From Octopus sinensis (Eukaryota): a stretch of 64,000 bases of DNA. The position numbers were made by a program, and so were the translations under genes. Below the pieces are notes generated by a model that saw only the letters and a list, made by a program, of their open reading frames with translations, had not been told where the DNA came from and did not search any database. Every line of letters starts with the position of its first letter. Positions within the stretch are counted from its first letter, which is position 1. This document shows, piece by piece, positions 5,016 to 52,915 of the stretch. The stretch lies in assembly GCF_006345805.1 (NCBI RefSeq), contig NC_043005.1, positions 51,274,001 to 51,338,000 of the forward strand, written 5' to 3'.

Positions 5016-5133
5016 CCTTCCTGTGCAATGCAGGGAAAGATGTTCTGCAAGTTTTATGGCATCTGTGCGACGATTTGTGATGGCCATGTAGAATGTTCCG
5101 ATGGAAGCGACGAGAGAGGCTGTGCAACAACAG
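5016..5133 (+). CDS. Exon: LDL-receptor class A repeat (PSCAMQGKMFCKFYGICATICDGHVECSDGSDERGCATT), phase 0-1
   Basis: tttgcag acceptor at 5015, cag|gtact donor at 5134; six Cys and the DGSDE acidic motif. Confidence 0.9.
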
Positions 5134-5630: not shown

Positions 5631-7437
5631 TGTTTCTTTATTAGCCACACAGGGCTGCACACAGATAGAACAAATTACAAGGTAGAGCTTTTCTTTTGAA
5701 GGTAAAAAAAATAAAAAATAAAAATAAAAATAAAAAAGGGGGGGTCGATCAAAAGGGATCGTAAAAGGAGAGAAAGAGGACAAAAAAAGGGGGGGGTTAA
5801 AAAAAAAGGGGAAGAGGAAAAAAAAAATGATCAATAGGGATCGTTATCACAGAAATGTCAATATGAAGTGTAAAGGGGAGGACAGGTGAGGTTTACCCGT
5901 GGAAAGAAAAGCCTACGGAAAAGACCACGGTAACCTCGGTCAATGAAGTCACATGTTATATTTCTTTTTTTTTTTTTTGCAAATAAGCAACTCTCTGTAT
6001 TAATTTTTACGGTTCATAGAATCATAGTCAAGGTGGCTTCGTCATTCATACGTGCCATCCTTGCTACATTCACCCATCTTTTTTTAAAACATTCACTAGA
6101 CAAAACTTGCCTCTCTACTCTCACTTTTTTCTTCAAGTGATACTTGAAGAAGTTGATGAGAGATTGACCAGAGAGGAAAGTGTTTGTCTCTAATCCTTTC
6201 AGGCGCGTCCACCAGATACATTCTTTCGCCATAGCCACAAGTATGATAAAAGTAGATCTTCCTTCCCGTTTGAAGGAAGGAGGCGTGACGATATTAACGA
6301 TAGACTCGGCTGATAAACCGACACGTCCCACACGTGACAGCAGTCGTTCGACATAAGCCCACAGGTGGGAAATTGCTGGACACTGCACGATTGCGTGCAG
6401 AGCGGTTTCGTCGCTCTGCCCGCATCTCGGGCAGGTCGGCCCCGTGTTTCTCGAGCCATGCCTATAGAGCTTATCCCGAACGGGTAGCGCTTCTTCGGTA
6501 GCACCGCCAGGCCAGGGATCTCTGGAAGTTGTCCATAGGTCCCGGGCCGAAAGTCGTTTGAAACAGGCGGGTCAGGTATTCCTCGTCGACGCCCAGGTTT
6601 GCCCCGAGCTCGTCGTCGTACCTTCCCTCCACTAATCCCCTATAGAATGCTTTGGTTGTGTTGAAGTCACTCAAGGTCGACCCGGGACGGCAGAGTTGCT
6701 TGAGAGCAACGCGACACTCGCGGTGCCATTCGCCCTTCCTCGGCCTCTTTTTGATCCACGACTGTAGTTCGGTCATGGAGACGAGTTGCGGAAATGCGTA
6801 CCTCACAAACGGCGACCACACCTGTTCACCGTCGTCTACATAGAGCCGGAGATGTCGCAGTCTCAGCGCGTGTCTGCGCATCATCAACCACGGCATGCCC
6901 AGCCCTCCTTTTAACGGGTGTTGACAGCAAATGGATCGCCTGACCATCGGGACGCATCCTTTCCACAAGAAGCGGAAGAGGATGCGTTCTAGTTTGGTGA
7001 TGGTAGGGTCGGGACAAGGTACGACGGTCAGGCGGTAGTAGATGATGGACGCGATGTACGCGTTCACCACCTCCGCCCGACCTTTTAGGGACAGTTTCCT
7101 CTCGGCCCATTGCTGGGCGAGAGTGACCACCCTACTCGTTATCTCGTTCCAGTTCTTCTCCATTTGGAGGTCCGGACCGAACCAGACCCCGAGCAACTCA
7201 ACCGGGCCGTCTGTCCAGCGTCCCACGACGGAGGTACTGGTGGACAGCATGGGCTTGCTTCTCCAGGTGCCGAGCCGCAAGCCCACTGACTTTTCCCGGT
7301 TGATTTTTGCTCCTGTCACCGCTTCGTAGTCTTTCAGTGTCTCGCCGACCCGCTCGATGTGCTCGTGGCTTGACACTATGACGGTGACGTCGTCCGCGTA
7401 TGCAGACACGCTCGTCCCGCATCCCAATTCTCGCGGG
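5631..7437 (-). mobile_element. 5'-truncated L1/Tx1-like LINE (RT C-terminal part, Zn-binding domain, 3' UTR) inserted in a (GATA)n tract
   Basis: YADD motif in ORF 6471-7487; +1 frameshift near 6500, then CPRCG...ET..HA.VQC; AATAAA on - strand at the 3' end; atgatagata on both flanks. Confidence 0.9.
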
Positions 7438-7452
7438 ATGATAGATAGATGA

Positions 7453-7486
<34 letters not shown>

Positions 7487-8585
7487 TATAGATAGATTTG
7501 AAGCGTGTTATACGTTAAAAAATTTTCGACCAGATCATCAGATGCTGTTTTACACTTCTAGTCATAATTCTATCTTGAGAGCACATCCTTTTCCATCATG
7601 ACCCAAAATCTTTAACTAAATCGTCTTCTTTTGTGTGTGTGTGTGTGTACATACATATGCGTACATATACATACACATACTATATATATATTTTTCAAGC
7701 GGAATAAGCAACTGTTGAAAGATCGATAATATGGTTCTTTTACAAAAAAAATTGGAAAATTCGTGTGGAACGTATATCACAAAGCTTCTTTGGATATTTG
7801 TTCAAACCCAGGCATGGCACAGTAGAGGCAGACGTAGTCAAGAAGTTAGATAAGGCATCGCAACCAACGCACTCGCAGCAAAATTGGCACTCAACCACTT
7901 CTTCAACGCGAAACACGAATGTTGCGTAGTCAGAGCTAAGACACGTGCTCTTAAGCACGAAGGGACGAAAGTGGAATCGACCAACGATTTGTGGTTGGGT
8001 GAAATTTCAGTATTGAAACTTCTTGAATATTCTTCGAAACACCATCCGATATATGGCAATAGTAAATTTAATTAGTCCCCTATTTTACCAACGTAATCTA
8101 CCCTATGGTCTGTTTACCAAAATCCCCTCTGTAACAAATATTCGAATAACTATATCGCTAGTCTGCTGGATATCTCCTTTCCCCATCACTCGAAAACACC
8201 AAGAACAGTCGTAGTTCTACGCTCTTTCCTCAAACTAAGCCATTATAATCTATTTCTTAAGCACTGTTCGTTGTTATACATAGTGGGAAAATTGCGTATG
8301 GAACAAGTGTCCTTTCAAGCTGAATAAGTCAGTGCCCTGGAAAGAGTGATCGAAGTCATTCACTCACCACTTCACATTAGGCTATACAACCAATCGTTTC
8401 TTGCCTTCTCCTCATAAAATCCTTGCGCTAGATTTAACTACTGATCACACGTGTTGACTGCTATGCAACAGTCCATGACAACGAGTTTCAAACAATTGTA
8501 ACAAAAGTTCTCAGTGCATAACGTTTCTGAAACGATTCTCACACTGAATTATTGCAAATACACGTCTTATCATTATATTTTTCAG

Positions 8586-11924: not shown

Positions 11925-12315
11925 CAGATATTTCAGGTGGAAGGGTAAGTCGATTACGGCGACGCCAGGGCTCGACTGCTACATATTTTATGGACACCGA
12001 AAGAATGAAAGGCAAAGTAGACCGCGGAAGCATTTGAAGTCAAAACATAAAGTTGGGCCAAATACCAGTGAGCATTTTGTCCGACGTGCCAAGCTGGTAC
12101 AGCAAGAATAAGGCGGCGAGCTGGCAGAAACGTTAGCAAGCCGTGCGAAATGCGTAGGCGTATTTCGTCTGCCGTTACGTTCTGAGTTCAAATTCCGCCG
12201 AGGTCGACAAATTAAGTACCAGTTACGAACTGGGTTCGATATAATCGACTTAATCCCTTTGTCTGTCCTTGTTTGTCTCCTCTGTGTTTAGCCCCTTGTG
12301 GGTAGTAAAGAAATG
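11925..12315. mobile_element. Two SINE copies in opposite orientation
   Basis: Reverse copy ~11925-12075; forward copy from ggcggcgagctggcagaaacgttagc at ~12113. Confidence 0.75.
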
Positions 12316-12925
12316 GGTACAGCAAGAATATGTGAAATGGTATTATGACCAAGTTGTGAGGGTTTACAGTGGAAGATTCGTCAGAAATAGGAATTTTAAG
12401 CTGGAGGTGAATGATATGATCATCGATCGGGTCGAAAGAGTGCTTGAGTCGGAGAAATGCAAAGTTTTTCGGGATTTTCCAATTCAAACGGATAAGAAGC
12501 TAGAAAATAACAGGCTAGTCATAACAATAATAGCCAATGGAAAGCAAATCTGTTTAGTAATTAATCCATAATGTTCGTTTTATTCCAGGATTGTACAGAA
12601 AGAGGATGAGAGATAAAAAATAAAATCCCTTATACTTTGAAGTTACAAAAGTTTGCACTATAAAAACTGTAAAGGATGTGCCTCTAATAATTGGCGCATT
12701 AGGTACTATAAGTAAAGATATAGACGAATGGGTTAAAGAGATTAGAACAGAATTCCTATAGAGCGTCTACAAAAAATTTGTCTCTTAGGGACAAGAAAGA
12801 TTATCAAGATTCTAAGCACTAGAAAGACAATTGAAAGCTAGTGGGTGCCTAGGTTATGAGCAGTAACCTGCAACCAACAGAAACTCTACCAGGAATAACA
12901 ACGAACCTGACTCAAATCAATAACA
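12315..12925 (+). mobile_element. R4/Dong-like LINE 3' fragment (restriction-like endonuclease domain and 3' UTR)
   Basis: DFPIQTDKKLENNR..I.I motif; 3' end matches the reverse complement of ~2850-2990. Confidence 0.8.
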
Positions 12926-12928
12926 ATG

Positions 12929-13031
12929 ACCACTGTTGTTTCTACATCCAAGATACCAACAATAGTAGTATCAGTCTCCCCTACTACCACACCTTCTCCC
13001 ACAACAACAACTGTTCCATCTACGACAGCAG
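12929..13031 (+). pseudogene. 5'-truncated copy of the Thr-rich D exon; donor intact, no acceptor
   Basis: Matches the 3' ~100 nt of exon 14732-15080. Upstream is a LINE 3' end with in-frame TGA at 12908-12910 and no AG between 12911 and 12929. Confidence 0.7.
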
Positions 13032-13237
13032 GTATGTGAAATTTGAATTAACTTCCATTCTCTAGTAATACCATCCCGCTGCCTTTCCCACAGGCTTTCA
13101 CGCGTTATGACAATGATTTTCTTCTGGATATATCGTGAAATCTTCCAAATCACTTACCTGTCAGTATACATTCAATGACACCTGTTAATAATTCAGTTGA
13201 TATACATTTATCAATTTCCTTCTTTCATTCCACACAG

Positions 13238-13420
13238 TTCCAACGACAACTACGGCAGCCACAACAACTACGGCAGCCACAACAACTACAGCAGCCACAA
13301 CTAAACCTACCACTGTTGTTTCTACATCGAAGCCACCAACAACAGTATCAGCCTCACCTACTACCACATCCTCTCCCACAACAACACCTGTGGCATCTAC
13401 GACAACGCCACCAACTACAG
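13238..13420 (+). CDS. Exon B1: Thr-rich mucin-like stalk (PTTTTAATTTTAA...PPTT), phase 1-1
   Basis: cattccacacag acceptor, cag|gtatgt donor, 183 nt, open frame. Confidence 0.85.
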
Positions 13421-13618
13421 GTATGTGAAATTTTGTGTTATCGTTCGGTTCTCTAACAAAACCTCTCCACTGCCTTTCCCGCATAAAATCAACGATTATC
13501 TGCTGGAAATATGGTGAGATCTTTCATATCACTGAACTGTTATTATTCATTGAAAACACACGTATTAATTGATTCTGTTGATATGCATTTGTCTATTTCC
13601 TGCTTTCCTTCTACACAG

Positions 13619-13896
13619 TTCCTACGACAACTTCGGTACCATGTCAGCTGGTTGACACAATGACCGATCTAACGGATGACGAGATTGTTCCATCGTCTTT
13701 GAAAACTGGCAGTCAAGCGACGGATGTGCGTCCTGGTGGTGAGGTGTGGACTCCTGCTAAGACTGACAGCTCGCCAAGCATCACGTTTACTTTTACACAC
13801 ACTCGCGATATCCGGAAAGTGCAAATCACGTCATTAACAAACGTCCAAGCTTTCAGCCCTACCGTTGTGTCGCCAAAGTCCAAATTGGAACCTGGA
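13619..13896 (+). CDS. Exon C1: N-terminal part of a divergent discoidin/F5-8C-like domain (PCQLVDTMTD...VWTPAKTDSSPSITFTF...EPG), phase 1-0
   Basis: ttctacacag acceptor, gga|gtaagt donor at 13897, open frame. Confidence 0.85.
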
Positions 13897-14296
13897 GTAA
13901 GTAAGATCACTTCTATTCGCATATACGCTGATAACACTCTCTATCAAAGTGTTAATATTTTCAATTTTAATCCACTCTTCTAAGCAGAGCGCATATAACA
14001 CTTTTCTACTTACGCACAATTCTATCGGACACTTTTGACATTCACATAACTTTGTCATGCATCGTCATATTCCAAAAGTAACACTGCTTAGTTTAGAAGC
14101 ACCTTTAAATGTCCTATAGATTTTCCAGGTATGTCTTTTAAAAGGAAGCCTCCTATTATGATAGACGCAAAGTATATTGGCATTTCCTCCCATATCACCA
14201 CTCCATTAGTCAGTAGCAAATATTCCATTCACGCTTCACACAACCCTGTTTATTCAATGATCACTATTCTTATGATTACGTCAAATTCGTATTTAG

Positions 14297-14594
14297 ATGT
14301 TTCCTGCAAATGAAATCTATGAAATTAAGGCTGACGTCGAAGTGAAGTCGCTGACGATTACGTTTCATCGAACAAACCCTCAACTAGCTATGTCAGCTGA
14401 GGTCAAGATATGGGAATGCAAGAAGCAAAAGCCAACAACAGCAGCAACGACAACACAGTCAACTGCGACGACAACTGCGAAAACAACTACGGCAGCCACG
14501 ACAACTACAACAGCCACAACTACAGCAGCCACAACTAAACCTACCACTGTTGTTTCTACATCCAAGGTACCAACAACAAAAGTATCAGTCTCCC
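14297..14594 (+). CDS. Exon D1, cut by the assembly gap: end of discoidin-like domain (MFPANE...EVKIWEC) plus Thr-rich stalk
   Basis: cgtatttag acceptor at 14296; matches 14732 onward until the Ns begin at 14595. Confidence 0.75.
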
Positions 14595-14694
14595 NNNNNN
14601 NNNNNNNNNNNNNNNNNNNNNNNNNNNNNNNNNNNNNNNNNNNNNNNNNNNNNNNNNNNNNNNNNNNNNNNNNNNNNNNNNNNNNNNNNNNNNN
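14595..14694. other. Assembly gap (100 N) inside the exon-cassette tandem array
   Basis: Ns in the sequence; ~335 bp left of the gap recur immediately right of it. Confidence 0.98.
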
Positions 14695-14731
14695 ATCACT
14701 ATTCTTATGATTACGTCAAATTCGTATTTAG

Positions 14732-15080
14732 ATGTTTCCTGCAAATGAAATCTATGAAATTAAGGCTGACGTCGAAGTGAAGTCGCTGACGATTACGTTT
14801 CATCGAACAAACCCTCAACTAGCTATGTCAGCTGAGGTCAAGATATGGGAATGCAAGAAGCAAAAGCCAACAACAGCAGCAACGACAACACAGTCAACTG
14901 CGACGACAACTGCGAAAACAACTACGGCAGCCACGACAACTACAACAGCCACAACTACAGCAGCCACAACTAAACCTACCACTGTTGTTTCTACATCCAA
15001 GGTACCAACAACAAAAGTATCAGTCTCCCCTACTACCACACCTTCTCCCACAACAACAACTGTTCCATCTACGACAGCAG
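14732..15080 (+). CDS. Exon D1': discoidin-like C-terminal part plus Thr-rich stalk, phase 0-1
   Basis: atttag acceptor, cag|gtatgt donor at 15081, 349 nt. Confidence 0.85.
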
Positions 15081-15286
15081 GTATGTGAAATTTGAATTAA
15101 CTTCCATTCTCTAGTAATACCATCCCGCTGCCTTTCCCACAGGCTTTCACGCGTTATGACAATGATTTTCTTCTGGATATATCGTGAAATCTTCCAAATC
15201 ACTTACCTGTCAGTATACATTCAATGACACCTGTTGATAATTCAGTTGATATATATTTATCAATTTCCTTCTTTCATTCCACACAG

Positions 15287-15466
15287 TTCCAACGACAACT
15301 ACGGCAGCCACAACAACTACGGCAGCCACAACAACTACAGCAGCCACAACTAAACCTACCACTGTTGTTTCTACATCGAAGCCACCAACAACAGTATCAG
15401 CCTCACTACACACATCCTCTCCCACAACAACCCCTGTGGCATCTACGACAACGCCACCAACTACAG
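15287..15466 (+). CDS. Exon B2: Thr-rich stalk, 3 nt shorter than B1, frame kept
   Basis: Same splice sites as B1; 180 nt. Confidence 0.8.
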
Positions 15467-15662
15467 GTATGTGAAATTTTGTGTTATCGTTCGGTTCTCT
15501 AACAAACCTCTCCACTGCCTTTCCCGCATAAATCAACGATTATCTGCTGGAAATATGGTGAGATCTTTCATATCACTGAACTGTTATTATTCATTGAAAA
15601 CACACGTATTAATTGATTCTGTTGGTATGCATTTGTCTATTTCCTGCTTTCCTTCTACACAG

Positions 15663-15942
15663 TTCCTACGACAACTTCGGTACCATGTCAGCTGGTTGAC
15701 ACAATGACCGATCTAACGGATGACGAGATTGTTCCATCGTCTTTGAAAACTGGCAGTCAAGCGACGGATGTGCGTCCTGGTGGTGAGGTGTGGACTCCTG
15801 CTAAGACTGACAGCTCGCCAAGCATCACGTTTACTTTTACACACACTCGCGATATCCGGAAAGTGCAAATCACGTCATTAACAAACGTCCAAGCTTTCAG
15901 CCCTACCGTTGTGTGTCGCCAAAGTCCAAATTGGAACCTGGA
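15663..15942 (+). CDS. Exon C2: discoidin-like N-terminal part with a +2 nt frameshift (gttgtgtgtcgcc vs gttgtgtcgcc in C1)
   Basis: 280 nt vs 278 nt in C1; ORF track ends ...VVCRQSPNWNLE* instead of ...VVSPKSKLEPG. Confidence 0.75.
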
Positions 15943-16341
15943 GTAAGTAAGATCACTTCTATTCGCATATACGCTGATAACACTCTCTATCAAAGTGTTA
16001 TATTTTCAAGTTTAATCCACTCTTCTAAGCAGAGCGCATATAACACTTTTCTACTTACGCACAATTCTATCGGACACTTTTGACATTCACATAACTTTGT
16101 CATGCATCGTCATATTCCAAAAGTAACACTGCTTAGTTTAGAAGCACCTTTAAATGTCCTATAGATTTTCCAGGTATGTCTTTTAAAAGGAAGCCTCATA
16201 TTATGATAGACGCAAAGTATATTGGCATTTCCTCCCATATCACCACTCCATTAGTCAGTAGCAAATATTCCATTCACGCTTCACACAACCCTGTTTATTC
16301 AATGATCACTATTCTTATGATTACGTCAAATTCGTATTTAG

Positions 16342-16690
16342 ATGTTTCCTGCAAATGAAATCTATGAAATTAAGGCTGACGTCGAAGTGAAGTCGCTGAC
16401 GATTACGTTTCATCGAACAAACCCTCAACTAGCTATGTCAGCTGAGGTCAAGATATGGGAATGCAAGAAGCAAAGGCCAACAACAGCAGCAACGACAACA
16501 CAGTCAACTGCGACGACAACTGCGAAAACAACTACGGCAGCCACGACAACTACAACAGCCACAACTACAGCAGCCACAACTAAACCTACCACTGTTGTTT
16601 CTACATCCAAGGTACCAACAACAAAAGTATCAGTCTCCCCTACTACCACACCTTCTCCCACAACAACAACTGTTCCATCTACGACAGCAG
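16342..16690 (+). CDS. Exon D2: discoidin-like C-terminal part plus Thr-rich stalk, phase 0-1
   Basis: Near-identical to 14732-15080; donor is GTTCGT instead of GTATGT. Confidence 0.82.
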
Positions 16691-16905
16691 GTTCGTGAAA
16701 TTTGAATTAACTTCGATTCTTTAGTAATACCATCCCCCTGTCTTTCCCACTGGCTTTCACGAGTCAAGACAATGATTATCTTTTGGATATATTGTGAAAT
16801 CTTTCAAATCACTTTATTGTCATTATTCATTGAATGGCAGCTATTAATTTTCTGTGGATATGCATTTTCTTTTCTTTTTTTATTTCCTGCTTTCCTTCTG
16901 CACAG

Positions 16906-17105
16906 TTCCTACCATAAGTTCGGCGCATGAGCTGTGTAACACAATGACTGATCTGAAATATGATGAGATTGTTCCATCGGCTTTGAAAACTGGCCGTGAA
17001 ATAAATTATGTTTTTCCTGGAGGGAACGTGTGTTCTCCTGCTATGACTGACATCAATAAAATAACTATCGTTGCACATTTGGTATCTTTTTTATCGACCT
17101 CGTAA
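16906..17105 (+). pseudogene. Degenerate third copy of exon C (relic or short alternative exon; possible donor at 17082)
   Basis: ttctgcacag acceptor; NTMTDLKYDEIVPSALKTG...PGGNVCSPAMTD aligns to C1, then similarity is lost and a stop follows at 17103-17105. Confidence 0.6.
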
Positions 17106-17989: not shown

Positions 17990-18560
17990 GCGGCAGAATT
18001 TGATCTGCGAACGAAAGTGCCAGAAGAAATACTGCAATACTACAAAGCATTTTTGGCGACGCTATATGTTCAGCTATTGCCTTTCACCCTTTCGGGGTCG
18101 ATAAAATAAGTTGCCAGTCGATTCCTCAAAACTGGCAGCTATGTGCTTAAATTAGAAGCATTTAAACTGAGGAGCTGACAGAATTGTTAGACCATCGGGA
18201 AATGCTTAGCATTATTTCCTCTAAGGCGGCGAGGTGGCAGAATCGTTAGCACGCCGGGTACAATATTTAGCAGTATTTCGCCCATGTTTACATTCTCAGT
18301 TCAAATTCCGCCGAGGTTGACTTTGCCTTTCACCCTTTCGGGGTCGATGAAATAAATACCAGTTGAGCACTGAGGTCGATGTAATTGACTTAGCTCCTTA
18401 CCACAAATTCCAGGCCTTGTGCCTATAGTTGAACGAATTATTTCCTCTACTTCTTTTCGTTCTGGGTTCAAATGCTGTCGGATTCATATTTTCCTTACAT
18501 CCCTCCGAGGTCGATAATTGTCAGTAAAATACTGGGATCAATTTAACTGATTTTCCCTTT
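17990..18560. mobile_element. Cluster of SINE copies and fragments in both orientations
   Basis: Repeated ttgcctttcaccctttcggggtcgat cores. Confidence 0.75.
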
Positions 18561-20954: not shown

Positions 20955-22020
20955 TGAAAGGCGGCGAGCTGGTAGAATCGTTAGCACGCGGGGCAATATG
21001 CTTAGCAACATTTCGTCTATGTGCACGTCCTGAGTTCAGCTTTAACCGAGGTCGACTTTGCCTTTCGTTGTCGATAAAATATATACTAGTTGAGTACTGG
21101 AGTCGATATAATCGACTAGTCCCCCTCCTCCGAATTCCAGACCTTGTGTCTATATTAGAAATGATTATTATTATTTATTGTTGTTGGTGTTAAGGCAGTG
21201 AACTGGCAGAATCGTTAGTACGCCGAGCGAAATGCTTAACGGCATTTCGTCTGCGTTACGTTCTGAGTTCAAATTCCGCCGGGGTCGACTTTGCCTTTCA
21301 TCCTTTCGGGGTCGATAAATTAGGTACCAGTTACGCACTGGGGTCGATGTATTCGACTTAATACCTATGTCTGTCCTGTTGTCCCTTCTGTGTTTACCCC
21401 TTGTGGGTAATAAAGAATAGTATTCGTCCTCCACTACGTTTTGAGTTCAAATTCCGTTGAGGTCGGCTTGCCTTTCAACCGTTCGGGTTCGATGAATAAG
21501 TACCAGTTACGCACTGGGGTCGATGTAATCGACTTTCCCCTTCCCCAATAATTTTCAAGGCCTTGTGCCTAGCGTAGAAATAATAATAATTGTTGTTGCT
21601 GTGAAAGGCAACGAACTGGCAGAATTGTTAGCACGCGGGGCAAAATGCTTAGCGTATTTCGTCTGTCTTTACGTTCTGAGTTCAAATCCCGCCGAGGTCG
21701 ACTTTGCCTTTTATCCTTTCGGGGTCGATAAATTAAGTACCAGTTACGCACTGGGGTCGATGTAATCAACTTAATCCCTTTGTCTGTCCTTGTTTGTCCC
21801 CTCTACGTTTAGCCCCTTGTGGGCAATAAAGAAATAAGAATTGTTAGCACGCGGGACGAAATACGTCCGTCGTTACGTTCTGAGTTCAAATTCTGCCGAG
21901 GTGGACTTTGCCCTTCACCCTTTTGGGGTCGATAAATTAAGTACCAGTGAAACACTGGGGTCAATAAAATCGACTCGTCCTCTCCGCTAAAATTTCAGGC
22001 CTTGTGCTTTTAGCAGAAAG
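20955..22020 (+). mobile_element. Head-to-tail cluster of at least five SINE copies
   Basis: Starts near 20960, 21193, 21425, 21606 and 21840, all in the same orientation. Confidence 0.85.
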
Positions 22021-23965: not shown

Positions 23966-24228
23966 TACCAGGTGTTTGTGAAGATCAGCTTAATGTAAAA
24001 GCCGAACAATTCAAAGCGAGCTCTGGTTCGGCAGCATCTGCTGTTCTGAGTCCCTCATCATCCGGTTGGTCTCCAGCCACTGAAAACGAAGAGTTAGTTA
24101 TCGATTTACAAAGAATGATTGATGTCACTGGATTGATTACTGAAAGCAGTCTGACTCGGTTGAAGATTCTCTACAAAATGGGAGAGATATGGAAAGCATA
24201 CACTGAATCCAGCAACGCCATAGCTTCG
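23966..24228 (+). CDS. Exon: F5/8 type C (discoidin) domain, N-terminal two thirds (VCEDQL...FKASS...GWSP...LVIDL...VTGLIT...IWKAY), phase 1-0
   Basis: Poly-T + aacag acceptor, tcg|gtaaat donor at 24229; FA58C motifs ASS, GW.P, L.IDL, VTG.T, W..Y. Confidence 0.9.
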
Positions 24229-28689: not shown

Positions 28690-31080
28690 ATTTATGATTG
28701 GGAAAAAGTCAGCTAACCCCACGCACCCCCACCATTTACTTCCTCCCCAAAATCCACAAACCCAACAACCCTGGCCGCCCCATCGTCTCCTCCTGTAACT
28801 GCCCCACGGAGCTCATCTAAAAATACCTCGACCGTGTCCTGTCCCCCCCCCCTAGTGGCGTCTCTTCCCTCCCACATCCACGATACCAACCATGCTCTCC
28901 GGTTTTTCAAATCTTTCTCCTTTCCTCCCGGCTCCTCCAAAATCCTTTTTACTATGGACATCCAGAGCCTCTATACCGTCATCTCTCACCACGAAGGACT
29001 GCGGGCACTTCAAAACTTTCTCGACCTCCGCCCCAGCCCTGAACCCGACACCTCCACACTCATTCGTCTGGCCGAACTTGTCCTTTCTCTTAACTGTTTC
29101 TCGTTCGCGGGTGAGTTCTACCAATAGTACTCGGGAGTGGCCATGGGAACGCGAATGGGCCCCAACTATGCGAACCTGTTCGTTGGCTACGTTGAGGCCC
29201 AAATATTCTGTAATTTCACTGGTCCCACTCCCGAACTATACGGTCATTACATTGACGACATTATCGGTGCCACCTCACTCTCCCGTGAACATCTAGATTC
29301 CTTCCTCTCTTTCGTTAAATCCTTCCATCCTGCCCTCCACTTCACCTCCACTATCTCCTAAACCTCTGTCGCCTTCCTCGACATTTCGGTCAGCATTCAT
29401 CACTCCACTCTTACCACCTCCATTCACTACAAACACGCAGACTCACACTCATACCTAAACTTCTCTTCCTCCCACCCCAAACACACTAAGCTGTCCATCC
29501 CCTATTCCCAATTCCTCTGTCTACGTAGGCTCTGTAGTGACGACCATGACTTTGAGACTCAGTCTCAACTCATGGCTCGCCACTTCATCCTACGTGGATA
29601 TTCCTCACCACTATCCACACCGCCCTTGCCAGAGCACGTTCCGTAGACCGTGCATCTGCTCTCTCCCCCCGAACCCGCCCTGCAGTCTCCCGCCTCCCTT
29701 TTCCCCTCACTTACCACCCCACCACCCTATCTCTCCAACGCACCATTCTTAGAGCTTTCCGGCATCTCCAGTCTGACCCGTCCACTTCACACCTCTTCCC
29801 TAACCGACCCCTCCCCTTTTTCAAACGAGCCCATAACCTACGAGACCTCTTGTCCACAGCTTCTTCCCTGACCCTACCGCCCAACCTGGCTCGTTCCCCT
29901 GCTCCCGCCCACGTTGCCGCACTTGCCCTTACCTCTCCAACACCACCCTCCTCACTGACACCCATCACCGACCCTATCGCATCCTCTACTCCTTCACCTG
30001 CACCTCCAGCAATATCATCTATTGCATCTCCTGCTCTCTCTGCCATTCCCTGTACATCGGACAAACGGGACACCGCTTGGCTGACCGGTTCGCGGAACAC
30101 CTCCGAGACATCCGCCTTGCCAACGATACACCGGTCTCATGCCATTTCCGCTCCACCGGTCACTCCTTGGAACACCTGTCTGTGTTTTGATTGTCCTTGC
30201 GTTTGCGCCGTGAACAGGGATTAATCTTCGCTCTTCGCTCTTTTACGCCATTTGGTCTCAACTCTCCCCCCTTTTCATCTAACCCACCCCCTGACTCCTA
30301 CTTCTCTTCAGTCCTTCATCTTTTCACCCCTACTCTCTTTCCCTCCTCTTCCTTCCTTTCCCTTCTTCCCTCTTCTTCTTTCTTTTTTCTTCTTCCCCCT
30401 CTCTCTTTCTCTCTACTCCCTCACTCCCCTTCTCTTCCCCTCATCCTCCTCTCCTCTCCCCTCCTTTCCCCTCCTTTCCCCTCCTCTTCCTCTCCTTCAC
30501 CCCTCCCTTCTCCTCCCCTTCCCCATCCTTCTCCTCCTCTCCTTCTTTCTCCTCCCCTCCACCTTCTCTTCTTCTCCCCCTCTCCTTCCTTCTCCTCTCC
30601 CTCCTCCTCCTCCGCTCTCCCCCACATCTCCCCTTCCCCCTCCTCTCCCTCCTCTCTCTTCTCTCCCCCACACCACACTACACTACACCATACGACATTA
30701 CACATCACATCATACATACACACGTCCAAACCACCAGCCCTCTTCCATATGCACATACATACTCTCTTATGCACACACGCACCTTCAGGTTGGAGCGAGG
30801 TCACTTGACCCTGTTATCTCCCCTACTATCCCTCTAGTGTCTAACGTCTGACCTCTAACGTTTGACCTCCGATCTCTGACTTCTGAAATAGGAACGCCAT
30901 GTTGGATCGCTAGCCCCTACACGCAATTTTTTCTCTCCTTGTTTCTTTTCTGTGTATCTTTCTGTCGAAGAACATTAGGCTCGAAACGTAAAAGACTTGT
31001 TTTATTTCTATTCCTGAGCGCCATACTAATACATTATTTGTTTGTACTTCACCTGCCTTCGTCTTTTGTTAATTTTCGTA
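28690..31080 (+). mobile_element. Penelope-like retroelement (RT + GIY-YIG, in-frame stops) with CT-rich tract and terminal region
   Basis: LFTMDIQSLYT, AMGTRMGPNYANLFVGYVE, YIDD; IIYCISC..C..LYIGQTG.RL.DRF.EH on translation of ~30010-30110. Confidence 0.9.
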
Positions 31081-32734: not shown

Positions 32735-33845
32735 CATTTCGTACGTCTTTACGTTCTTGGTTCAAATCCCGGCAACGTCGACTTTGCTTTTCATCCTTTC
32801 GGGATCAATAAAGTAAAATGCACGTACCAATTGAGTACTGGGTCGATGTAATCAACCTGCTCTCTCTCTCTCAAAATTGCTGGCCTTGTACCAAAATTTG
32901 AAACCATTATTATTGTTGTTGTTGTTGTTATTGAGTGAGAGAGCAGCACACGCTATCAAAGTGATTCTGGGTACGAATATACGAAGCCCAACATTCCCGT
33001 CATAATTACCAATCTGATAAGGGTACACCAGGCACATGCATAACGACTATATATGCGCGACATGGTGATCTTATATCAAGATAAACAGCACATGACTTTG
33101 CAGTAGGGCCCAGTTAGAATTTTCTTCAGGTCGGATAACCAATCCCGTTCAAAAGGTCCTCGAATTAGAGTTGCTTAGGAATGATGAACACAACATCCAT
33201 GTTTCCAGGGGTGACCTATTCAAACTGCAAAGAATCCCTCCTCAACACATGGCTATGTTGTTCCCTCATTACTCTTGCTCGTGATCAGAGATGCACATAT
33301 CGTCAGCCACTAAGGTATATGCTCAACTAAAGTCATGCAATTGACAAGCAAATCTATTGTATTCAGCAGAATATTTACTCTGGTCCGTCTTTTATACCAA
33401 GACAAGGCGGCGAGCTGGTAGAATCGTTAGCACGTCGGGCGAAATGCTTAGCGGCATTTCATCCCTTTTTACGTTTTGAGTTCAAATTCCATTGAGGTCG
33501 ACTTTGCCTTTCATCCTTTCGGGGGTCGAAGAAATAGTATCAGTTGAGTGCTGGGAAGGATGTAATCGACTATCCCCTCCCACAAATTTCAGGCCTTGTC
33601 CTTATAGTATAAATGATTAGTATGAAAAATGCGGCGTGCTGGCAGAATCGTTAGCACACCGGACAAAAATGCTTAGCGGCATTTCGTCCGTCCTTACGTT
33701 CTGAATTCAAATTCCGCCGTGGTGGACTTTGCCTTTCATCCTTTCGGGGTCGATAATTTAAGTGCCAGTCAAACACTGTGCTCGATGCAATCGACTTAAC
33801 CCCTACACCAAAATGGCTGCCCTTGTGGAAAAATTTGAAACCATT
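32735..33845. mobile_element. SINE copies plus an R4/Dong-like 3' end (32930-33360, - strand)
   Basis: 32930-33360 is the reverse complement of 3880-4290; three forward SINE copies at 33405-33845. Confidence 0.75.
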
Positions 33846-34723: not shown

Positions 34724-34802
34724 ATGCCTCTTACTGGTCTGAATGGTCTCCTTGGTCAAATTGTTCATCAGACTGTAATGCGCAGAAGCAAACTAGGACG
34801 AG
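34724..34802 (+). CDS. Exon: first half of TSP1 repeat 1 (ASYWSEWSPWSNCSSDCNAQKQTRTR), phase 1-2
   Basis: atcttacag acceptor, ag|gtaagt donor; WxxWxxW and RxR motifs. Confidence 0.9.
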
Positions 34803-35152
34803 GTAAGTTTTAAAATCTCATTTAAAAATTTCTCGATCAATTATTTTTGACATAAGTACAAAGTCATGAATGATTATGAAGGGTAGTTATAAATGATTGA
34901 GTCGACTCCAGTACCCGAATTTCGAGGAAAACCAAAATTGTTACCGTCACCCTTTCAAACACAGGAAGACAAAATCGCTGATATTCGTCGAGGTCTTGAT
35001 TCAGATGATATCCAGAACGTATTAAATATTAGTTTCAAATTTTGGTACAAGGCTAGCAAATTTGAGGGAGCGATAAGTCGATTACATCGAACCTAGTGCT
35101 CAACTGATACTTATTTTATCGACCCCGAAAGGAAGAAAGGCAAATCGACCTC

Positions 35153-35188
<36 letters not shown>

Positions 35189-35415
35189 ATATATATATTA
35201 GAAGAATGAGGTCATCAGAAATCTGGATGGCTTTATATTTACAGATATTTATTAGTAGTTTACATGTTAGTATGTTTCCAGATATTTATTAGTATGTTAC
35301 ATAAAAACATGTAACATACTAATAAATATCTGTAAATATAAACCATCCAGATCTCTAAGTACCTCATTTCTTCTAATATATAATACCTGTACATCATCTC
35401 AAACCTTCTAATATA

Positions 35416-35461
<46 letters not shown>

Positions 35462-35614
35462 AATATATATATATATTGTATATGTATGTATATATATACA
35501 TATATATACATGTATATACATATATATATACATATATATACATATATATATATACATATATATATACATATATATATATTATATATATACATATATATAT
35601 ACATATATATATAC

Positions 35615-35709
<95 letters not shown>

Positions 35710-35753
35710 ATATATATATATATATACTATATAATATATATACATATATATAC

Positions 35754-35797
<44 letters not shown>

Positions 35798-35858
35798 TAC
35801 ATATATATATATATATACAATATACATATATATATATATATAATACATATATATATAT

Positions 35859-35907
<49 letters not shown>

Positions 35908-35912
35908 GATAC

Positions 35913-35962
<50 letters not shown>

Positions 35963-35999
35963 CTACATATATATATATATAGTATATATATATATACAC

Positions 36000-36066
<67 letters not shown>

Positions 36067-36108
36067 ATATATATTATTATATATATATATACATATAATA
36101 TATTATAC

Positions 36109-36148
<40 letters not shown>

Positions 36149-36225
36149 TATATAATAACATATATATATATATAGATATATATATCATATATATATATAT
36201 ATACATATATATATACATATATATA

Positions 36226-36268
<43 letters not shown>

Positions 36269-36581
36269 CATTATATATATATATACTATATATATATCTA
36301 CATATATATATACATATATATATATCATATATATATATATACATATATACATAATATATATTCTACATATATATATACATATATAATAATATATATATAT
36401 ATATATATACATATCTACTATATATATCATATATACATATATATAGATACATATATATATATATAATACATATCTATATCATATATATATATCTATAATA
36501 TAATATATATATACATATATATACATATATATATATCTATATATATATATATACATATATATAATACATATATAATATCTA

Positions 36582-36613
<32 letters not shown>

Positions 36614-36679
36614 CATATATATACATATATACATTCTAATATAATATAGATATATATATATATACATATATATATATAC

Positions 36680-36744
<65 letters not shown>

Positions 36745-37214
36745 CATATATATATAGATATATAGAATATATATATATAATACAGATATATATATATCTA
36801 TATATATATATATAGAATATATAATATTATACATATATAGATAGATATATATATAATATATATTATAAGATATATATACTATATATACTATATATATATA
36901 TCTATATATATATATATTATAGCTATAATATATATATTAATCATTATATAATATATATACATATAATATATATATATATATATTATACATATCTATATAT
37001 ATATTATATAATATATATCATATATATAGACATATATCATATATACAATATATATATATATCTATTTATATATATATATCATATATATATATATATATAT
37101 ATAATATATAATCTATATACAGATATATATATACATATATCTATATACCTATATATATATATACATATATATATATACATAATATAATATACATATATAT
37201 ATATACATATATAT

Positions 37215-37265
<51 letters not shown>

Positions 37266-37482
37266 AAATGAGAAATGCTGACAAAATAATTTAAGTAATT
37301 TAAGTATTAATTAAGTGAAGTTCTTTTAACCGGTTGCGCATTTCTGTAAATATAAACCATCCAGATCTCTAAGTACCTCATTTCTTCTAATATATAATAC
37401 CTGTACATCATCATAAAAACCTTCTAATATATATATATTATATATATATTATATATCTATATATATAATATATATATATATA

Positions 37483-37523
<41 letters not shown>

Positions 37524-37666
37524 TATATACATATATATACATATATATACATTATATACATATATATATACATATATATACATATATATATACTATATAT
37601 CAATATATATATCTATAATACATATATATATATATATATACATATATATATACATATATAGATACA

Positions 37667-37720
<54 letters not shown>

Positions 37721-37779
37721 CATTATTATATATATATATACATATACATATATATATATATACATTATATAACTATATA

Positions 37780-37818
<39 letters not shown>

Positions 37819-38064
37819 TACATATATTATACATATATATATAATATATATATTATATACATATATATATATATATACATATATACATATATATATATAC
37901 ATATATACATATATATATATATAATAACATATATATATACATATATATATATATATACATATATATATATCTATACATATATATATACATATATATTATA
38001 ATATATATATATATATATACTATATATATATACATATATATATATATACATATATAATATATAT

Positions 38065-38127
<63 letters not shown>

Positions 38128-38530
38128 CATTACATAATATATAATACTATATATATATATACATATATACATATATATATACATATATATTATATATACA
38201 TATATATACATATATATATACATATATATATATCCATATATTATAATATATATATACATATATACATATATATACATATATACATATATATATACATATT
38301 ATATATACATATATCATATATTACATATATATATATACATATATACATATATATATACATATATAATATATATATATACCTATATATAATACATATATAC
38401 ATATATATGTACATATATATCTATACATAATATATATATACATATATACATATTATAACATATTATATATATACATATATATATACATATAACATATATA
38501 TTACATATATATATATATACATATATATAC

Positions 38531-38662
<132 letters not shown>

Positions 38663-38759
38663 ATATAAAATATTATTCGAGACAAACCACTATTTTGCAA
38701 AACAAACAAGGAAAGACTTAATTAATACATAAAATTTTAATAAATAGTCAAAAAAACCG

Positions 38760-38802
38760 CCACTACAATCGTTTCTTGTCTTGATCGACAATCTTCAGGT
38801 GG
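38760..38802 (-). ncRNA. Minimal type I hammerhead ribozyme motif (intact copy)
   Basis: - strand: CCAC-CUGAAGA-UUGUC-GAUCAA-GACAA-GAAAC-GAUU-GUA-GUGG; 4-bp stem I, 5-bp stem II, complete core. Confidence 0.78.
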
Positions 38803-38848
38803 ACTTCCAATAATTCAGTGTCAAATTTGACACGAAATTATTGGAAGT

Positions 38849-38889
38849 CCACCTGAAGATTGTCGATCAAGACGAAACGATTGTAGTGG
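38849..38889 (+). ncRNA. Mirror hammerhead copy with 2 nt missing from stem II (probably impaired)
   Basis: CCAC-CUGAAGA-UUGUC-GAUCAA-GAC--GAAAC-GAUU-GUA-GUGG. Confidence 0.55.
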
Positions 38890-39104
38890 CGTTTTTTTTT
38901 ACTATTTATTAAAATTTTATGTATTAATTAAGTCTTTCCTTTTTGTTTTGCAAAATAGTGGTTTTGTCTCGAATAATATTTTATAATATTTTACTATAAA
39001 TCGATTTAATCCTAAATCTGATTTTTTCCCTGTAAATTTGGATTTATTCCCTAATATTTATTATTATATATATATATTATACATATATATATACATATAT
39101 ATAT

Positions 39105-39138
<34 letters not shown>

Positions 39139-39191
39139 CATATATATACTATATATCTATAATATATACATATATATATAATATATATACA

Positions 39192-39336
<145 letters not shown>

Positions 39337-39353
39337 TCTACATATATATATAG

Positions 39354-39402
<49 letters not shown>

Positions 39403-39463
39403 CATTATATACATACATATATATATATAATATATATATATATTATATATATATATATATATA

Positions 39464-39730
39464 AAAGGAAATGAAGAAAATGCTGACACAAATAATTTAA
39501 GTAATTTAAGTAATTTAATTAAGTGAAAGTTCTTTTTACCGGTTGCGCATTGTTATGCTTATCAAAAGATAGATTTTTTCCTCTTATCTGACTTTTTGAA
39601 AGTCAGATAAGAGGAAAAAATCTATCTTTTGATAAGCATAACAAAATGCGCAACCGGTAAAAAGAACTTCACCTAATAAATTACTTAAATTACTTAAATT
39701 ATTTTGTCAGCATTTTCTTCATTCCTTTTT
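39464..39730. repeat. ~265-bp fold-back element with a ~3-nt loop at 39596-39598
   Basis: Arms are reverse complements. Confidence 0.93.
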
Positions 39731-45909: not shown

Positions 45910-46068
45910 ACTGTGCTTACACTGTGTGGTCCGAATGGTCGAAATGCAGTTCACCTTGTGATAGTAACACGCAAACAAGGACTCGTGTGAAATTGACGGG
46001 CATAGGAAAAGAAAGTTGCAATAAGGAGCTTACGGAAACTAAAACGTGTAATAAAACGTCTTGTGAAG
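45910..46068 (+). CDS. Exon: TSP1 repeat 2 (CAYTVWSEWSKCSSPCDSNTQTRTR...CNKELTETKTCNKTSCE), phase 1-1
   Basis: ttttcttacag acceptor, g|gtaag donor; WSEWS.CS..C and RTR motifs. Confidence 0.92.
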
Positions 46069-47944: not shown

Positions 47945-48234
47945 CTGTTTGCCAGCTTCGCAGTCGAGTTGGTTACATCACAGACAGTGCTGGATGCGCA
48001 TCTGATAACATAGCTGATACATCGTACTGTAGTGGTCTCTGTGGAGAAAGCTCTTCGGTGCCGAGACTTATGGAAGATGCAAACGGTATCATAACAATGA
48101 CTAATGACTGCAAATGCTGTACAGGTAAAACTGGATCTCAAATTTCGGTGCCGATGACATGCGCAAATGGCTTGAAAAAGACAGTATACGTCCGTCCGAT
48201 GGTTTCATGCAGTTGTAATAAATGCATGAGTTAG
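47945..48234 (+). CDS. Terminal exon: C-terminal cystine knot (CTCK) with 11 Cys, stop TAG
   Basis: ttttatag acceptor; C-x14-C-x10-CSGLC...CKCC...C...CSCNKC pattern. Confidence 0.92.

Positions 48235-52883: not shown

Positions 52884-52915
<32 letters not shown>

What the first reader, a model, noticed from the sequence alone, without database searches (positions are those of the whole stretch)
12929..17105. Three-exon cassette (Thr-rich stalk + discoidin-like domain) expanding as a 1.61-kb tandem array with homogenised introns
Seen: the B-C-D exon unit repeats together with its introns. Central copies differ only by scattered substitutions and indels, even in introns, while both edge copies (12929-13031; 16691-17105) are clearly diverged. 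The unit starts and ends in phase 1, so whole units can be added or lost in frame. Known: homogeneous centres with diverged edges are the signature of unequal crossing-over or gene conversion. Inference: a beads-on-a-string mucin whose number of globular domains may vary between individuals, or between isoforms by unit skipping.
Basis: partly seen in the sequence, partly recalled or inferred. Interest (0 to 1): 0.82.

Follow-up and report, generated by a model that had tools for sequence, protein, structure and literature searches.

The report
Tandem exon-cassette duplication, mucin-like gene
A 1.61-kb block of three exons plus their introns, encoding a threonine-rich stalk and a small discoidin-fold domain, really is repeated head to tail inside a large secreted-matrix gene of a cephalopod-like genome. 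Only two near-identical copies are assembled, one is frameshifted as written, and the gap between them looks like an unmerged contig overlap, so this is a real but fairly ordinary example of a known kind of coding tandem repeat.

Summary
The repeat is real. Two full units (12929-14542, 14978-16587) are 98.8% identical, with as many differences in introns as in exons, and a degenerate third unit follows (16588-17105).

The N gap (14595-14694) is flanked by an exact 335-nt overlap in register, within the same exon type. It is most simply an unmerged contig overlap, so the assembly supports 2 full units plus the degenerate one. Extra collapsed units cannot be excluded.

Unit 1 codes 810 nt (phase 1 to phase 1). 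Unit 2 codes 809 nt because of a GT insertion at 15910-15911 and runs into a stop. The left "edge" is a truncation against transposon-derived DNA, not a diverged copy. The right edge is truly diverged: it lacks exon B, and its intron is an intron-1/intron-2 mosaic (p=0.0008), a direct trace of recombination.

The domain misses Pfam, but a discoidin fold is supported by a HMMER hit to a lamprey F5/8C protein and by AlphaFold/Foldseek.

The array lies on the same strand as, and is phase-compatible with, LDLa, F5/8C, TSP1 and cystine-knot exons. Related cassettes assemble as circular or tandem contigs in other samples.

Verdict: a new member of the multi-exon coding tandem-repeat class (LPA KIV-2, DMBT1). 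Expression and copy-number variation are untested.

The parts
12929..13031 (+). Left-edge remnant: the last 103 nt of a D-type (Thr-rich) exon, with a GTATGT donor at 13032. There is no acceptor, and homology to the unit stops abruptly at 12929 against repeat/TE-derived DNA.
   Evidence: It is 96% identical to 14978-15080, with 4 clustered substitutions at 12953-12966.
13238..13420 (+). Exon B1 (183 nt, phase 1 to 1), a Thr/Ala/Pro-rich stalk. It is itself an internal duplicate of the tail of exon D.
   Evidence: (family D1).
13619..13896 (+). Exon C1 (278 nt, phase 1 to 0): the end of the linker plus the N-terminal two thirds of the discoidin-like domain (first Cys and the PGGEVWTP motif).
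14297..14594 (+). Exon D1, first 298 of 349 nt: the C-terminal third of the domain (last Cys) and the start of the Thr-rich stalk. It is cut by the gap.
   Evidence: It is identical to 14732-15029.
14595..14694 (.). Assembly gap of 100 N.
   Evidence: The flanks share an exact 335-nt suffix/prefix overlap.
14695..15029 (+). Exact repeat of 14260-14594 (end of intron 3 plus exon D). Most likely the same DNA written twice, i.e. an unmerged contig overlap.
   Evidence: The distinguishing site A14865 equals A14430, whereas the copy-2 tail has G16475.
14732..15080 (+). Complete exon D (349 nt, phase 0 to 1), belonging to unit 1 if the overlap is merged.
15287..15466 (+). Exon B2 (180 nt), with an in-frame 3-nt deletion relative to B1.
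15663..15942 (+). Exon C2 (280 nt). A GT insertion at 15910-15911 shifts the frame, and exon D2 then reaches TGA after 15 codons.
16342..16690 (+). Exon D2 (349 nt), with a weakened donor (GTTCGT).
16691..16905 (+). Mosaic intron of the degenerate third unit. The 5' part resembles intron 1 and the 3' part resembles intron 2, and exon B is absent.
   Evidence: max-chi-square permutation p=0.0008.
16906..17105 (+). Degenerate exon-C-like segment. It is 61% identical in protein to C1 over 41 aa, the family-invariant Trp is replaced by Cys, homology ends near 17052, and there is an in-frame TAA at 17103-17105.
5016..5133 (+). Upstream LDL-receptor class A exon on the same strand, ending in phase 1 (ACAACAG|gt). 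This is context and a candidate neighbouring exon of the host gene.
23966..24228 (+). Downstream F5/8 type C (discoidin) exon, 263 nt, phase 1 to 0. It has the same layout as cassette exon C: it starts with VP, has an early Cys, and has a phase-0 intron about 84 aa after that Cys.
47946..48234 (+). Cystine-knot (CTCK) terminal exon with its stop, the probable 3' end of the host gene. TSP1 exons lie at about 34733-34802, 41230-41462 and 45910-46068.

Best explanation
This is a genuine, young tandem duplication of a 1.61-kb three-exon cassette: Thr-rich O-glycosylation-type stalk exons plus a roughly 125-residue, Cys-bracketed discoidin-fold domain split by a phase-0 intron.

The cassette lies inside a large secreted matrix or mucin-type gene (LDLa ... 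F5/8C ... TSP1 x3 ... cystine knot) of a cephalopod-like genome. It enters and leaves in phase 1, as do the flanking LDLa and F5/8C exons. Unequal homologous recombination between units, or between the paralogous introns within a unit, can therefore add or remove whole beads in frame.

Shown:
- the repeat and its equal exon and intron divergence;
- the symmetric phases;
- the mosaic intron with exon B lost in the third unit;
- the discoidin-type fold;
- homogeneous tandem arrays of related cassettes in other samples.

Inferred:
- that the array is spliced into the flanking gene;
- that the stalk is O-glycosylated;
- that copy number varies between individuals.

As assembled there are two full units. 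The N gap is probably a 335-nt unmerged overlap. The second unit is frameshifted, which is either a real disabling mutation or an assembly indel.
For: Repeat:
- 98.8% identity over 1610 nt, with 8 difference events in exons and 8 in introns.
- Each contig on either side of the gap spans more than one period on its own. Contig A holds 12929-13031 and 14543-14594. Contig B holds exon D at 14732 and at 16342. The tandem arrangement therefore does not depend on the scaffold join.

Coding structure:
- Canonical splice sites. Unit 1 codes 810 nt, phase 1 to 1.
- The hypothetical splice LDLa>B1>C1>D1>F5/8C reads open.

Recombination and selection:
- The copy-3 intron is an intron-1/intron-2 mosaic, p=0.0008.
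- Ka/Ks is 0.50 against the related cassette in L001. Both Cys residues and the intron position and phase are conserved.

Related arrays:
- L001 and L002 are circular unitigs of period 1373 bp (281+190 = 471 coding nt, in frame).
- L004-L006 are rotations of the same unit, seen in 5 SRA runs.
- L003 has identical 119-nt ends, giving a period of 1475 bp.
- Introns of L001 and the window do not align although the exons do at 77-82%, so the identity between intron copies within the array is not slow evolution.

Fold:
- phmmer E=8e-6 to a lamprey lactadherin-like protein that scores 1.8e-46 on Pfam F5_F8_type_C.
- hhalign E=1.6e-5 to the same protein.
- The AF2 model (pLDDT 74, pTM 0.72) has top Foldseek hits to neuropilin b1, CASPR2 discoidin, factor VIII C domains, the DDR2 DS domain and CBM32, with TM 0.56-0.73.

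Host-gene exons.
Against: - No transcript evidence of any kind.
- No annotated protein in the 15-billion-sequence collections contains this domain. Only unnamed fragments from read assemblies and metagenomes do.
- Unit 2 is out of frame as written (809 coding nt).
- Unit 3 is degenerate and ends in a stop.
- The left unit is truncated and no signal-peptide exon was identified.
- With two copies, a single recent duplication explains the data without ongoing homogenisation.
- Pfam F5_F8_type_C does not hit the window's domain.
- Only one of five AF2 models was confident.
- The LDLa, F5/8C and Cys_knot exon hits are below Pfam's whole-protein cut-offs, as expected for single exons but still weak.
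Confidence: 0.68

Rival explanations
1. Assembly artefact. The two near-identical units are two haplotypes (or a gap-filling duplication) of one unit, written in tandem around the gap. The real locus would have one intact unit plus the old degenerate one.
For: - The gap lies exactly between the copies and is flanked by a 335-nt exact duplication, a typical signature of false duplication at gaps.
- The 1.2% difference is in the range of allelic divergence.
- Half of the indel differences are one-base changes in A runs (13458, 13485, 13954).
Against: - Contig B alone contains exon D twice (14732-15080 and 16342-16690), and upstream of its unit it carries exon-D sequence where contig A carries TE-derived DNA. 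The two contigs therefore cannot simply be alleles of one unit.
- The distinguishing site at 14430/14865/16475 fits a plain overlap of successive units.
- The degenerate third unit shows the locus has been tandem for a long time.
- Related cassettes are tandem in five other read sets.
Confidence: 0.12
2. Decaying relic. The array is real DNA but no longer coding. It would be a truncated, frameshifted, stop-containing remnant lying in an intron of the LDLa/F5-8C/TSP1/CTCK gene (or between genes), and its copies would be alike only because the duplication is recent.
For: - 5' truncation at 12929 next to TE-derived sequence.
- +2 frameshift in unit 2 and a stop in unit 3.
- Exon and intron differences between the copies are equal, and 4 of 5 exonic codon changes are non-synonymous, so there is no sign of selection since the duplication.
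- LDLa>F5/8C reads open with the array skipped entirely.
- The domain is absent from all annotated proteins searched.
Against: - Unit 1 is fully intact with canonical splice sites and open frames.
- Ka/Ks is 0.50 against the relative in L001, with the Cys residues, motifs, intron position and phase conserved.
- The frameshift is a 2-nt change in a GTGTGT run and may be an assembly error.
- The phase compatibility with both flanking exons would otherwise be a coincidence (about 1 in 9).
Confidence: 0.25
3. Collapsed larger array. The gap hides one or more further units, so the true locus is a longer, actively homogenised array of three to many units, as in classical coding VNTRs.
For: - Assemblers break in exactly this way inside near-identical tandem units, and the 100-N gap has an unknown true size (finding note).
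- Relatives assemble as closed circles, meaning the units are identical at k-mer scale.
Against: - The 335-nt overlap is exact and the distinguishing sites are consistent with a direct junction of unit 1 and unit 2.
- No data in hand show excess depth.
Confidence: 0.3

Closest known systems
LPA kringle IV type 2 coding VNTR (human apolipoprotein(a))
   Same: - A whole protein domain encoded by several exons is repeated together with its introns.
- Units are nearly identical, introns included.
- The repeat stays in frame.
- The core is flanked by more diverged copies (KIV-1, KIV-3).
- The array is hard to assemble and is under-represented in references (PMC11201333).
   Different: - Kringle rather than discoidin fold.
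- Two exons and about 5.6 kb per unit, against three exons and 1.61 kb.
- Up to 40 copies with proven polymorphism, against 2 assembled copies with no population data.
- No Thr-rich linker.
DMBT1 / gp340 / salivary agglutinin SRCR-SID repeat
   Same: - A mucin-like beads-on-a-string protein.
- Globular-domain exons alternate with Ser/Thr/Pro-rich spacer exons in a roughly 4-kb, nearly identical multi-exon unit.
- It is listed among the protein-coding VNTRs (PMC11201333). The remaining points rest on established knowledge of DMBT1.
   Different: - SRCR beads rather than discoidin-like beads.
- CUB and ZP domains at the C-terminus rather than TSP1 and a cystine knot.
- Copy-number variation is demonstrated in humans but untested here.
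Lamprey 'lactadherin-like' XP_061433317 (P0003): F5/8C domains separated by Thr/Pro-rich linkers
   Same: - The only named protein that the cassette domain hits (E=8e-6).
- It has near-identical discoidin beads joined by T/P-rich linkers, with a Cys at each end of the bead.
   Different: - Its domains are canonical F5_F8_type_C (Pfam E=1.8e-46) of about 130 aa, only about 25% identical to the cassette domain.
- Its gene structure was not examined.
- It comes from a vertebrate, so the shared architecture is probably convergent.
SCO-spondin / gel-forming mucin type matrix proteins (host gene)
   Same: LDLa, F5/8 type C, TSP1 repeats and a C-terminal cystine knot lie on one strand in that order. 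This set is characteristic of SCO-spondin, and the cystine knot of gel-forming mucins (established knowledge).
   Different: - No VWD, TIL or EMI exons were seen, though the 5' part of the gene would lie outside the window.
- There are only three TSP1 exons.
- A PTS-plus-discoidin cassette array is not a described feature of SCO-spondin.

Membership tests
F5/8 type C (discoidin) domain, Pfam PF00754 | Scores above the Pfam gathering threshold | tested here: not met
   There is no PF00754 hit for the window domain or for the L001 domain. The family member P0007 reaches 22.1 bits against a cut-off of 28.2.
F5/8 type C (discoidin) domain, Pfam PF00754 | Discoidin-type beta-sandwich fold | tested here: met
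   The AF2 model built with an 8-sequence alignment has pLDDT 74.4 and pTM 0.72. Foldseek's top 30 hits are almost all F5/8C domains (neuropilin b1/b2, CASPR2, factor VIII C, DDR2 DS) or CBM32, with TM 0.56-0.73. Caveat: only 1 of 5 models was confident.
F5/8 type C (discoidin) domain, Pfam PF00754 | Cys near the N- and C-terminus of the domain (terminal disulfide) and a conserved Trp after the SS-rich loop | tested here: met
   The pattern is C-x(124)-C, with PSS...PGGEVWTP. The Trp is invariant in alignment A2 and both Cys are kept in the window, L001 and L003. The disulfide itself cannot be tested here.
Mucin-type PTS (Pro/Thr/Ser) stalk | A long stretch dominated by Thr, Ser and Pro | tested here: met
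   The 139-aa linker between beads has 69 T, 15 S, 17 P and 18 A. It contains short imperfect 15- and 18-nt repeats.
Mucin-type PTS (Pro/Thr/Ser) stalk | A secreted, O-glycosylated product | not testable with these tools
   No signal-peptide exon was identified in the window, and glycosylation needs biochemistry.
Multi-exon coding tandem repeat (LPA KIV-2 / DMBT1 type) | Head-to-tail units that include introns, with near-identical exons and introns | tested here: met
   Two units are 98.8% identical, with 8 difference events in exons and 8 in introns.
Multi-exon coding tandem repeat (LPA KIV-2 / DMBT1 type) | The unit's coding length is a multiple of 3, with the same entry and exit phase | tested here: inconclusive
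   Unit 1 has 810 nt, phase 1 to 1. Unit 2 has 809 nt because of the GT insertion at 15910-15911. Whether this is a real mutation or an assembly error is unknown.
Multi-exon coding tandem repeat (LPA KIV-2 / DMBT1 type) | Copy number differs between individuals | not testable with these tools
   No reads or other individuals of this species were available. The related unit is present in 5 SRA runs, but copy numbers are not recoverable.
Multi-exon coding tandem repeat (LPA KIV-2 / DMBT1 type) | The units are spliced into an mRNA | not testable with these tools
   There are no transcript data. Support is indirect only: canonical splice sites, phase compatibility with the flanking exons, and Ka/Ks of 0.50.
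SCO-spondin-like host gene | LDLa + F5/8C + TSP1 repeats + C-terminal cystine knot on one strand | tested here: met
   Pfam hits on single exons: Ldl_recept_a 3.9e-4, F5_F8_type_C 2.6e-3, TSP_1 2.9e-8, 8.3e-5 and 0.017, Cys_knot 1.2e-4. Several are below the whole-protein cut-offs.
SCO-spondin-like host gene | N-terminal EMI, VWD and TIL modules | not tested
   These would lie upstream of the window. Nothing of the kind was noticed in 1-5 kb.

The most novel reading that the evidence does not exclude
The cassette domain belongs to an unrecognised, compact branch of the discoidin superfamily. Its PTS-linked, intron-containing cassettes would amplify and homogenise repeatedly in several marine animals: this genome, the organism behind the SRR118693xx runs, and metagenome and TARA plankton contigs. 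The result would be lineage-specific, possibly hypervariable, lectin-like mucins.
Probability: 0.3. Interest if true: 0.6.

Novelty: new member of a known kind. Interest (0 to 1): 0.4.

Why it matters
If the array is expressed and varies in copy number, it would be an invertebrate counterpart of LPA KIV-2 or DMBT1. That means a matrix or mucus protein whose number of putative sugar- or lipid-binding discoidin beads is set by unequal recombination, which could bear on mucus properties or surface recognition in cephalopods.

It also flags a domain family that current domain libraries miss and that genome annotations seem to skip.

On the practical side, the gap-flanking 335-nt duplication and the 2-nt frameshift are concrete assembly-quality issues that would mislead gene prediction at this locus.

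Tried and rejected
- Pfam and PDB sequence searches with the single domain gave only chance-level hits. A PDB profile search with alignment A1 gave one E=9 chance hit, which was ignored.
- The word-indexed protein search found no relatives of the domain or of the cystine-knot exon.
- Exact-product look-ups of window ORFs (14732-15088 and 13660-13983) found no other assemblies, so the gap could not be bridged with independent contigs.
- Two metagenome scans, one with peptide patterns and one with a conserved 22-mer, found nothing.
- Rfam found nothing in the window.
- A paper search for the SRA run id and for octopus+mucin+discoidin found nothing.
- BLASTP of the cassette domain against the gene's own F5/8C exon was not significant (E=0.22), and hhalign was weak (E=0.031). 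The idea that the cassette was copied from the resident discoidin domain rests only on the shared exon layout.
- An alternative donor 4 nt downstream in exon C2 would restore the length but creates a TAA, so it does not rescue unit 2 (read directly from the sequence).
The second exon of the resident F5/8C domain was not located.


Full report
**What the sequence is.** The window is eukaryotic and rich in transposons and SINEs. A LINE-type reverse-transcriptase ORF (6471-7487, minus strand) has its best named relatives in the cephalopods Argonauta hians and Acanthosepion pharaonis. I therefore treat the genome as cephalopod-like. This rests on transposon homology only.

**The repeat.**
- Direct-repeat and BLAST analysis shows a head-to-tail unit of 1610-1614 bp.
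- Copy 1 (12929-14542) and copy 2 (14978-16587) differ at 11 substitutions and about six indel events, giving 98.8% identity.
- Eight of these events fall in the 810 exonic nt and eight in the 804 intronic nt.
- Four of the five exonic codon changes are non-synonymous.
- The two copies have therefore diverged, or been homogenised, without visible selection.
- This is far beyond chance and confirms the core observation.

**The gap.**
- The only run of N in the window is 14595-14694.
- The 335 nt before it (14260-14594) are identical to the 335 nt after it (14695-15029).
- Both flanks lie in the same exon type (D) and are in register.
- One site distinguishes unit tails: A at 14430 against G at 16475. 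The post-gap piece has A at 14865, so it is the tail of copy 1.
- The simplest reading is that two contigs overlap by 335 nt and were joined with a placeholder gap. Removing 14595-15029 gives a continuous, in-frame exon D and an array of two full units plus a degenerate third.
- I cannot exclude further identical units collapsed at this point. That needs reads.
- Each contig on its own spans more than one period, so the tandem arrangement does not depend on the scaffold join.

**Exon structure.** All donors are GTATGT or GTAAGT, and all acceptors are pyrimidine-rich followed by CAG or TAG.

| Exon | Unit 1 | Unit 2 | Length and phase (unit 1) |
|---|---|---|---|
| B | 13238-13420 | 15287-15466 (180 nt) | 183 nt, phase 1 to 1 |
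| C | 13619-13896 | 15663-15942 (280 nt) | 278 nt, phase 1 to 0 |
| D | 14297-14594, continued as 14732-15080 | 16342-16690 (349 nt) | 349 nt, phase 0 to 1 |

- In unit 2, exon B has lost 3 nt in frame.
- Exon C of unit 2 has gained GT at 15910-15911, so the unit codes 809 nt. Exon D2 is then read out of frame to a TGA after 15 codons.
- Unit 1 is the intact version, because it keeps the length and register of the relative in L001.
It may be real, or it may be an assembly indel in a GTGTGT run.

**Edges.**
- The left edge (12929-13031) is 96% identical to the equivalent part of the other units, and the intron that follows it is 99% identical.
- Homology stops dead at 12929. Upstream lie SINE copies and a retroelement-derived segment (12560-12851, similar to 3176-2874).
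- No further copy of the domain exists anywhere else in the window. The left edge is a truncation, not a diverged copy.
- The right edge is truly old: about 85% identity over 16588-16924 and 75-77% over the exon-C-like part.
- In the right edge the family-invariant Trp is replaced, homology is lost after about 17052, and there is an in-frame TAA at 17103-17105.

**Direct trace of recombination.**
- Within the unit, exon B plus intron 2 is an older internal duplicate of the tail of exon D plus intron 1. The two introns are 73.5% identical.
- The third unit has no exon B.
- Its single intron (16691-16905) matches intron 1 at almost every informative site in its 5' part and switches to intron 2 in its 3' part. 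A max-chi-square permutation test gives p=0.0008.
- This is what a crossover between the paralogous introns would leave.

**The protein parts.**
- The linker between beads is 139 aa with 69 Thr, 15 Ser and 17 Pro, which is a mucin-type stalk by composition.
- The bead is about 125 aa, bracketed by two Cys residues.
- Pfam does not recognise it, and the word-indexed search found nothing.
- An exhaustive HMMER search of 1.84 billion representatives found seven relatives.
  - One is a 59%-identical fragment from read assemblies (P0001).
  - Several are unnamed metagenome or TARA fragments.
  - One is a lamprey 'lactadherin-like' protein at E=8e-6. It consists of three canonical F5/8C domains (Pfam 1.8e-46) joined by Thr/Pro-rich linkers.
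- hhalign of the family profile against one lamprey domain gives E=1.6e-5.
- The family member P0007 scores just under the Pfam F5_F8_type_C cut-off.
- A single-sequence AlphaFold model was poor (pLDDT 65) but already pointed to CBM32.
- With an 8-sequence alignment the best model reached pLDDT 74 and pTM 0.72. Its top Foldseek hits were neuropilin b1/b2, CASPR2 discoidin, factor VIII C domains, DDR2 and CBM32, with TM 0.56-0.73.
- 'Discoidin-like' is therefore supported at fold level. The domain fails the Pfam membership test, and only one of five models was confident.

**Context.** On the same strand the window carries the following exons:
- an LDLa exon (5016-5133, ending in phase 1);
- an F5/8C exon (23966-24228, phase 1 to 0);
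- TSP1 exons near 34.7, 41.3 and 46.0 kb;
- a terminal cystine-knot exon (47946-48234).

This set resembles SCO-spondin or mucin-type matrix proteins.
- The hypothetical splice LDLa>B1>C1>D1>F5/8C reads open.
- Including unit 2 gives a stop.
- Skipping the array also reads open.
- The resident F5/8C exon has the same layout as cassette exon C: phase-1 start with Val-Pro, an early Cys, and a phase-0 intron about 84 residues later. This hints that the cassette descends from that domain, but the sequence similarity is not significant.
- There is no transcript evidence, so membership of the array in this gene is inferred.

**Relatives elsewhere.**
- P0001 and P0008 lie on contigs from five runs of one SRA series.
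- Two of those contigs (L001, L002) have identical 30-nt ends, meaning they are circular unitigs of a 1373-bp period. Three others (L004-L006) are rotations of the same unit that cross the junction.
- That unit has two exons (281 + 190 = 471 nt, in frame) with the same phases and intron position. It has a short linker that matches the window's exon-B tail, and a SINE in the intron.
- Its exons align to the window at 77-82%, but its introns do not align at all. Introns diverge quickly between arrays while staying 99% identical within an array.
- Ka/Ks between the two domains is 0.50, which indicates moderate constraint.
- A metagenome contig (L003) has identical 119-nt ends, giving a period of 1475 bp, and carries two diverged beads per unit.
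- Intron-containing tandem arrays are therefore a recurring state of this domain family. This argues against a pure assembly artefact here and for recurrent amplification or concerted evolution.

**Comparison with known systems.**
- The mechanism and architecture match the class of multi-exon coding tandem repeats.
- The best-known example is LPA KIV-2: two exons per unit, about 5.6 kb, near-identical units including introns, and diverged flanking KIV-1 and KIV-3.
- The closest in protein design is DMBT1: SRCR beads with Ser/Thr/Pro spacers in a roughly 4-kb unit (PMC11201333, plus established knowledge).
- What is new is the bead type and the animal group, not the principle.

**Verdict.**
- It is over-read in three ways. 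Only two full units are supported, and 435 nt of the span are probably artefact. The left edge is truncated rather than diverged. The second unit is frameshifted.
- The recombination mechanism is supported by the mosaic intron.
- Copy-number polymorphism, isoform skipping and even expression remain untested.
- Interest is moderate (0.4). Novelty: a new member of a known kind.

Noticed in passing
window 5016-5133, 23966-24228, ~34733-34802, ~41230-41462, ~45910-46068, 47946-48234 (+): Exons of a large extracellular-matrix gene: LDLa, F5/8 type C, three TSP1 and a terminal cystine knot with its stop. The set resembles SCO-spondin or mucin-type proteins. Word-indexed protein search found no annotated homologue of the cystine-knot exon.
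   Followed up: partly
window ~28700-30200 (+): Penelope-like retroelement. It has reverse-transcriptase motifs (YIDDI near 29.3 kb) followed by a GIY-YIG endonuclease domain (Pfam E=0.0024 at 29837-30187).
   Followed up: no
window 6471-7487 (-): LINE-type RT ORF of 338 aa with cephalopod relatives. One 61%-identical hit (P0015) is deposited as a protein of a 'Herbaspirillum sp.' MAG, which is probably animal DNA contaminating that bacterial bin.
   Followed up: no
window 12109-12314, 18222-18321, 21191-21835, 33404-33833, 39967-40370, 49436-49659: Many copies of a tRNA-like SINE (about 75-90% identical to each other), in both orientations. Two inverted copies sit just upstream of the array.
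   Followed up: no
window ~35000-39600 and 52400-54500: Several kilobases of TA/TATG-type simple sequence with GC down to 9%. These give long spurious 'YIYIYI' ORFs.
   Followed up: no
L003 1-1594 (ENA ERZ17091574): This metagenome contig has identical 119-nt ends, so it is a circular or tandem assembly with a 1475-bp period. It carries two different beads of the same domain family per unit, and the intron sits at the same position and phase. The source organism is unknown.
   Followed up: partly
L001 ~470-800: The intron of the related 1373-bp cassette holds a tRNA-like SINE of a family that has no match in this window. This suggests the SRR118693xx organism is a different lineage, not the same species.
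   Followed up: no
window 12926-12928: An in-frame ATG lies immediately before the truncated left-edge exon (M-TTVVSTSK...). The peptide that follows has no signal-peptide character, so the ATG is probably fortuitous.
   Followed up: no
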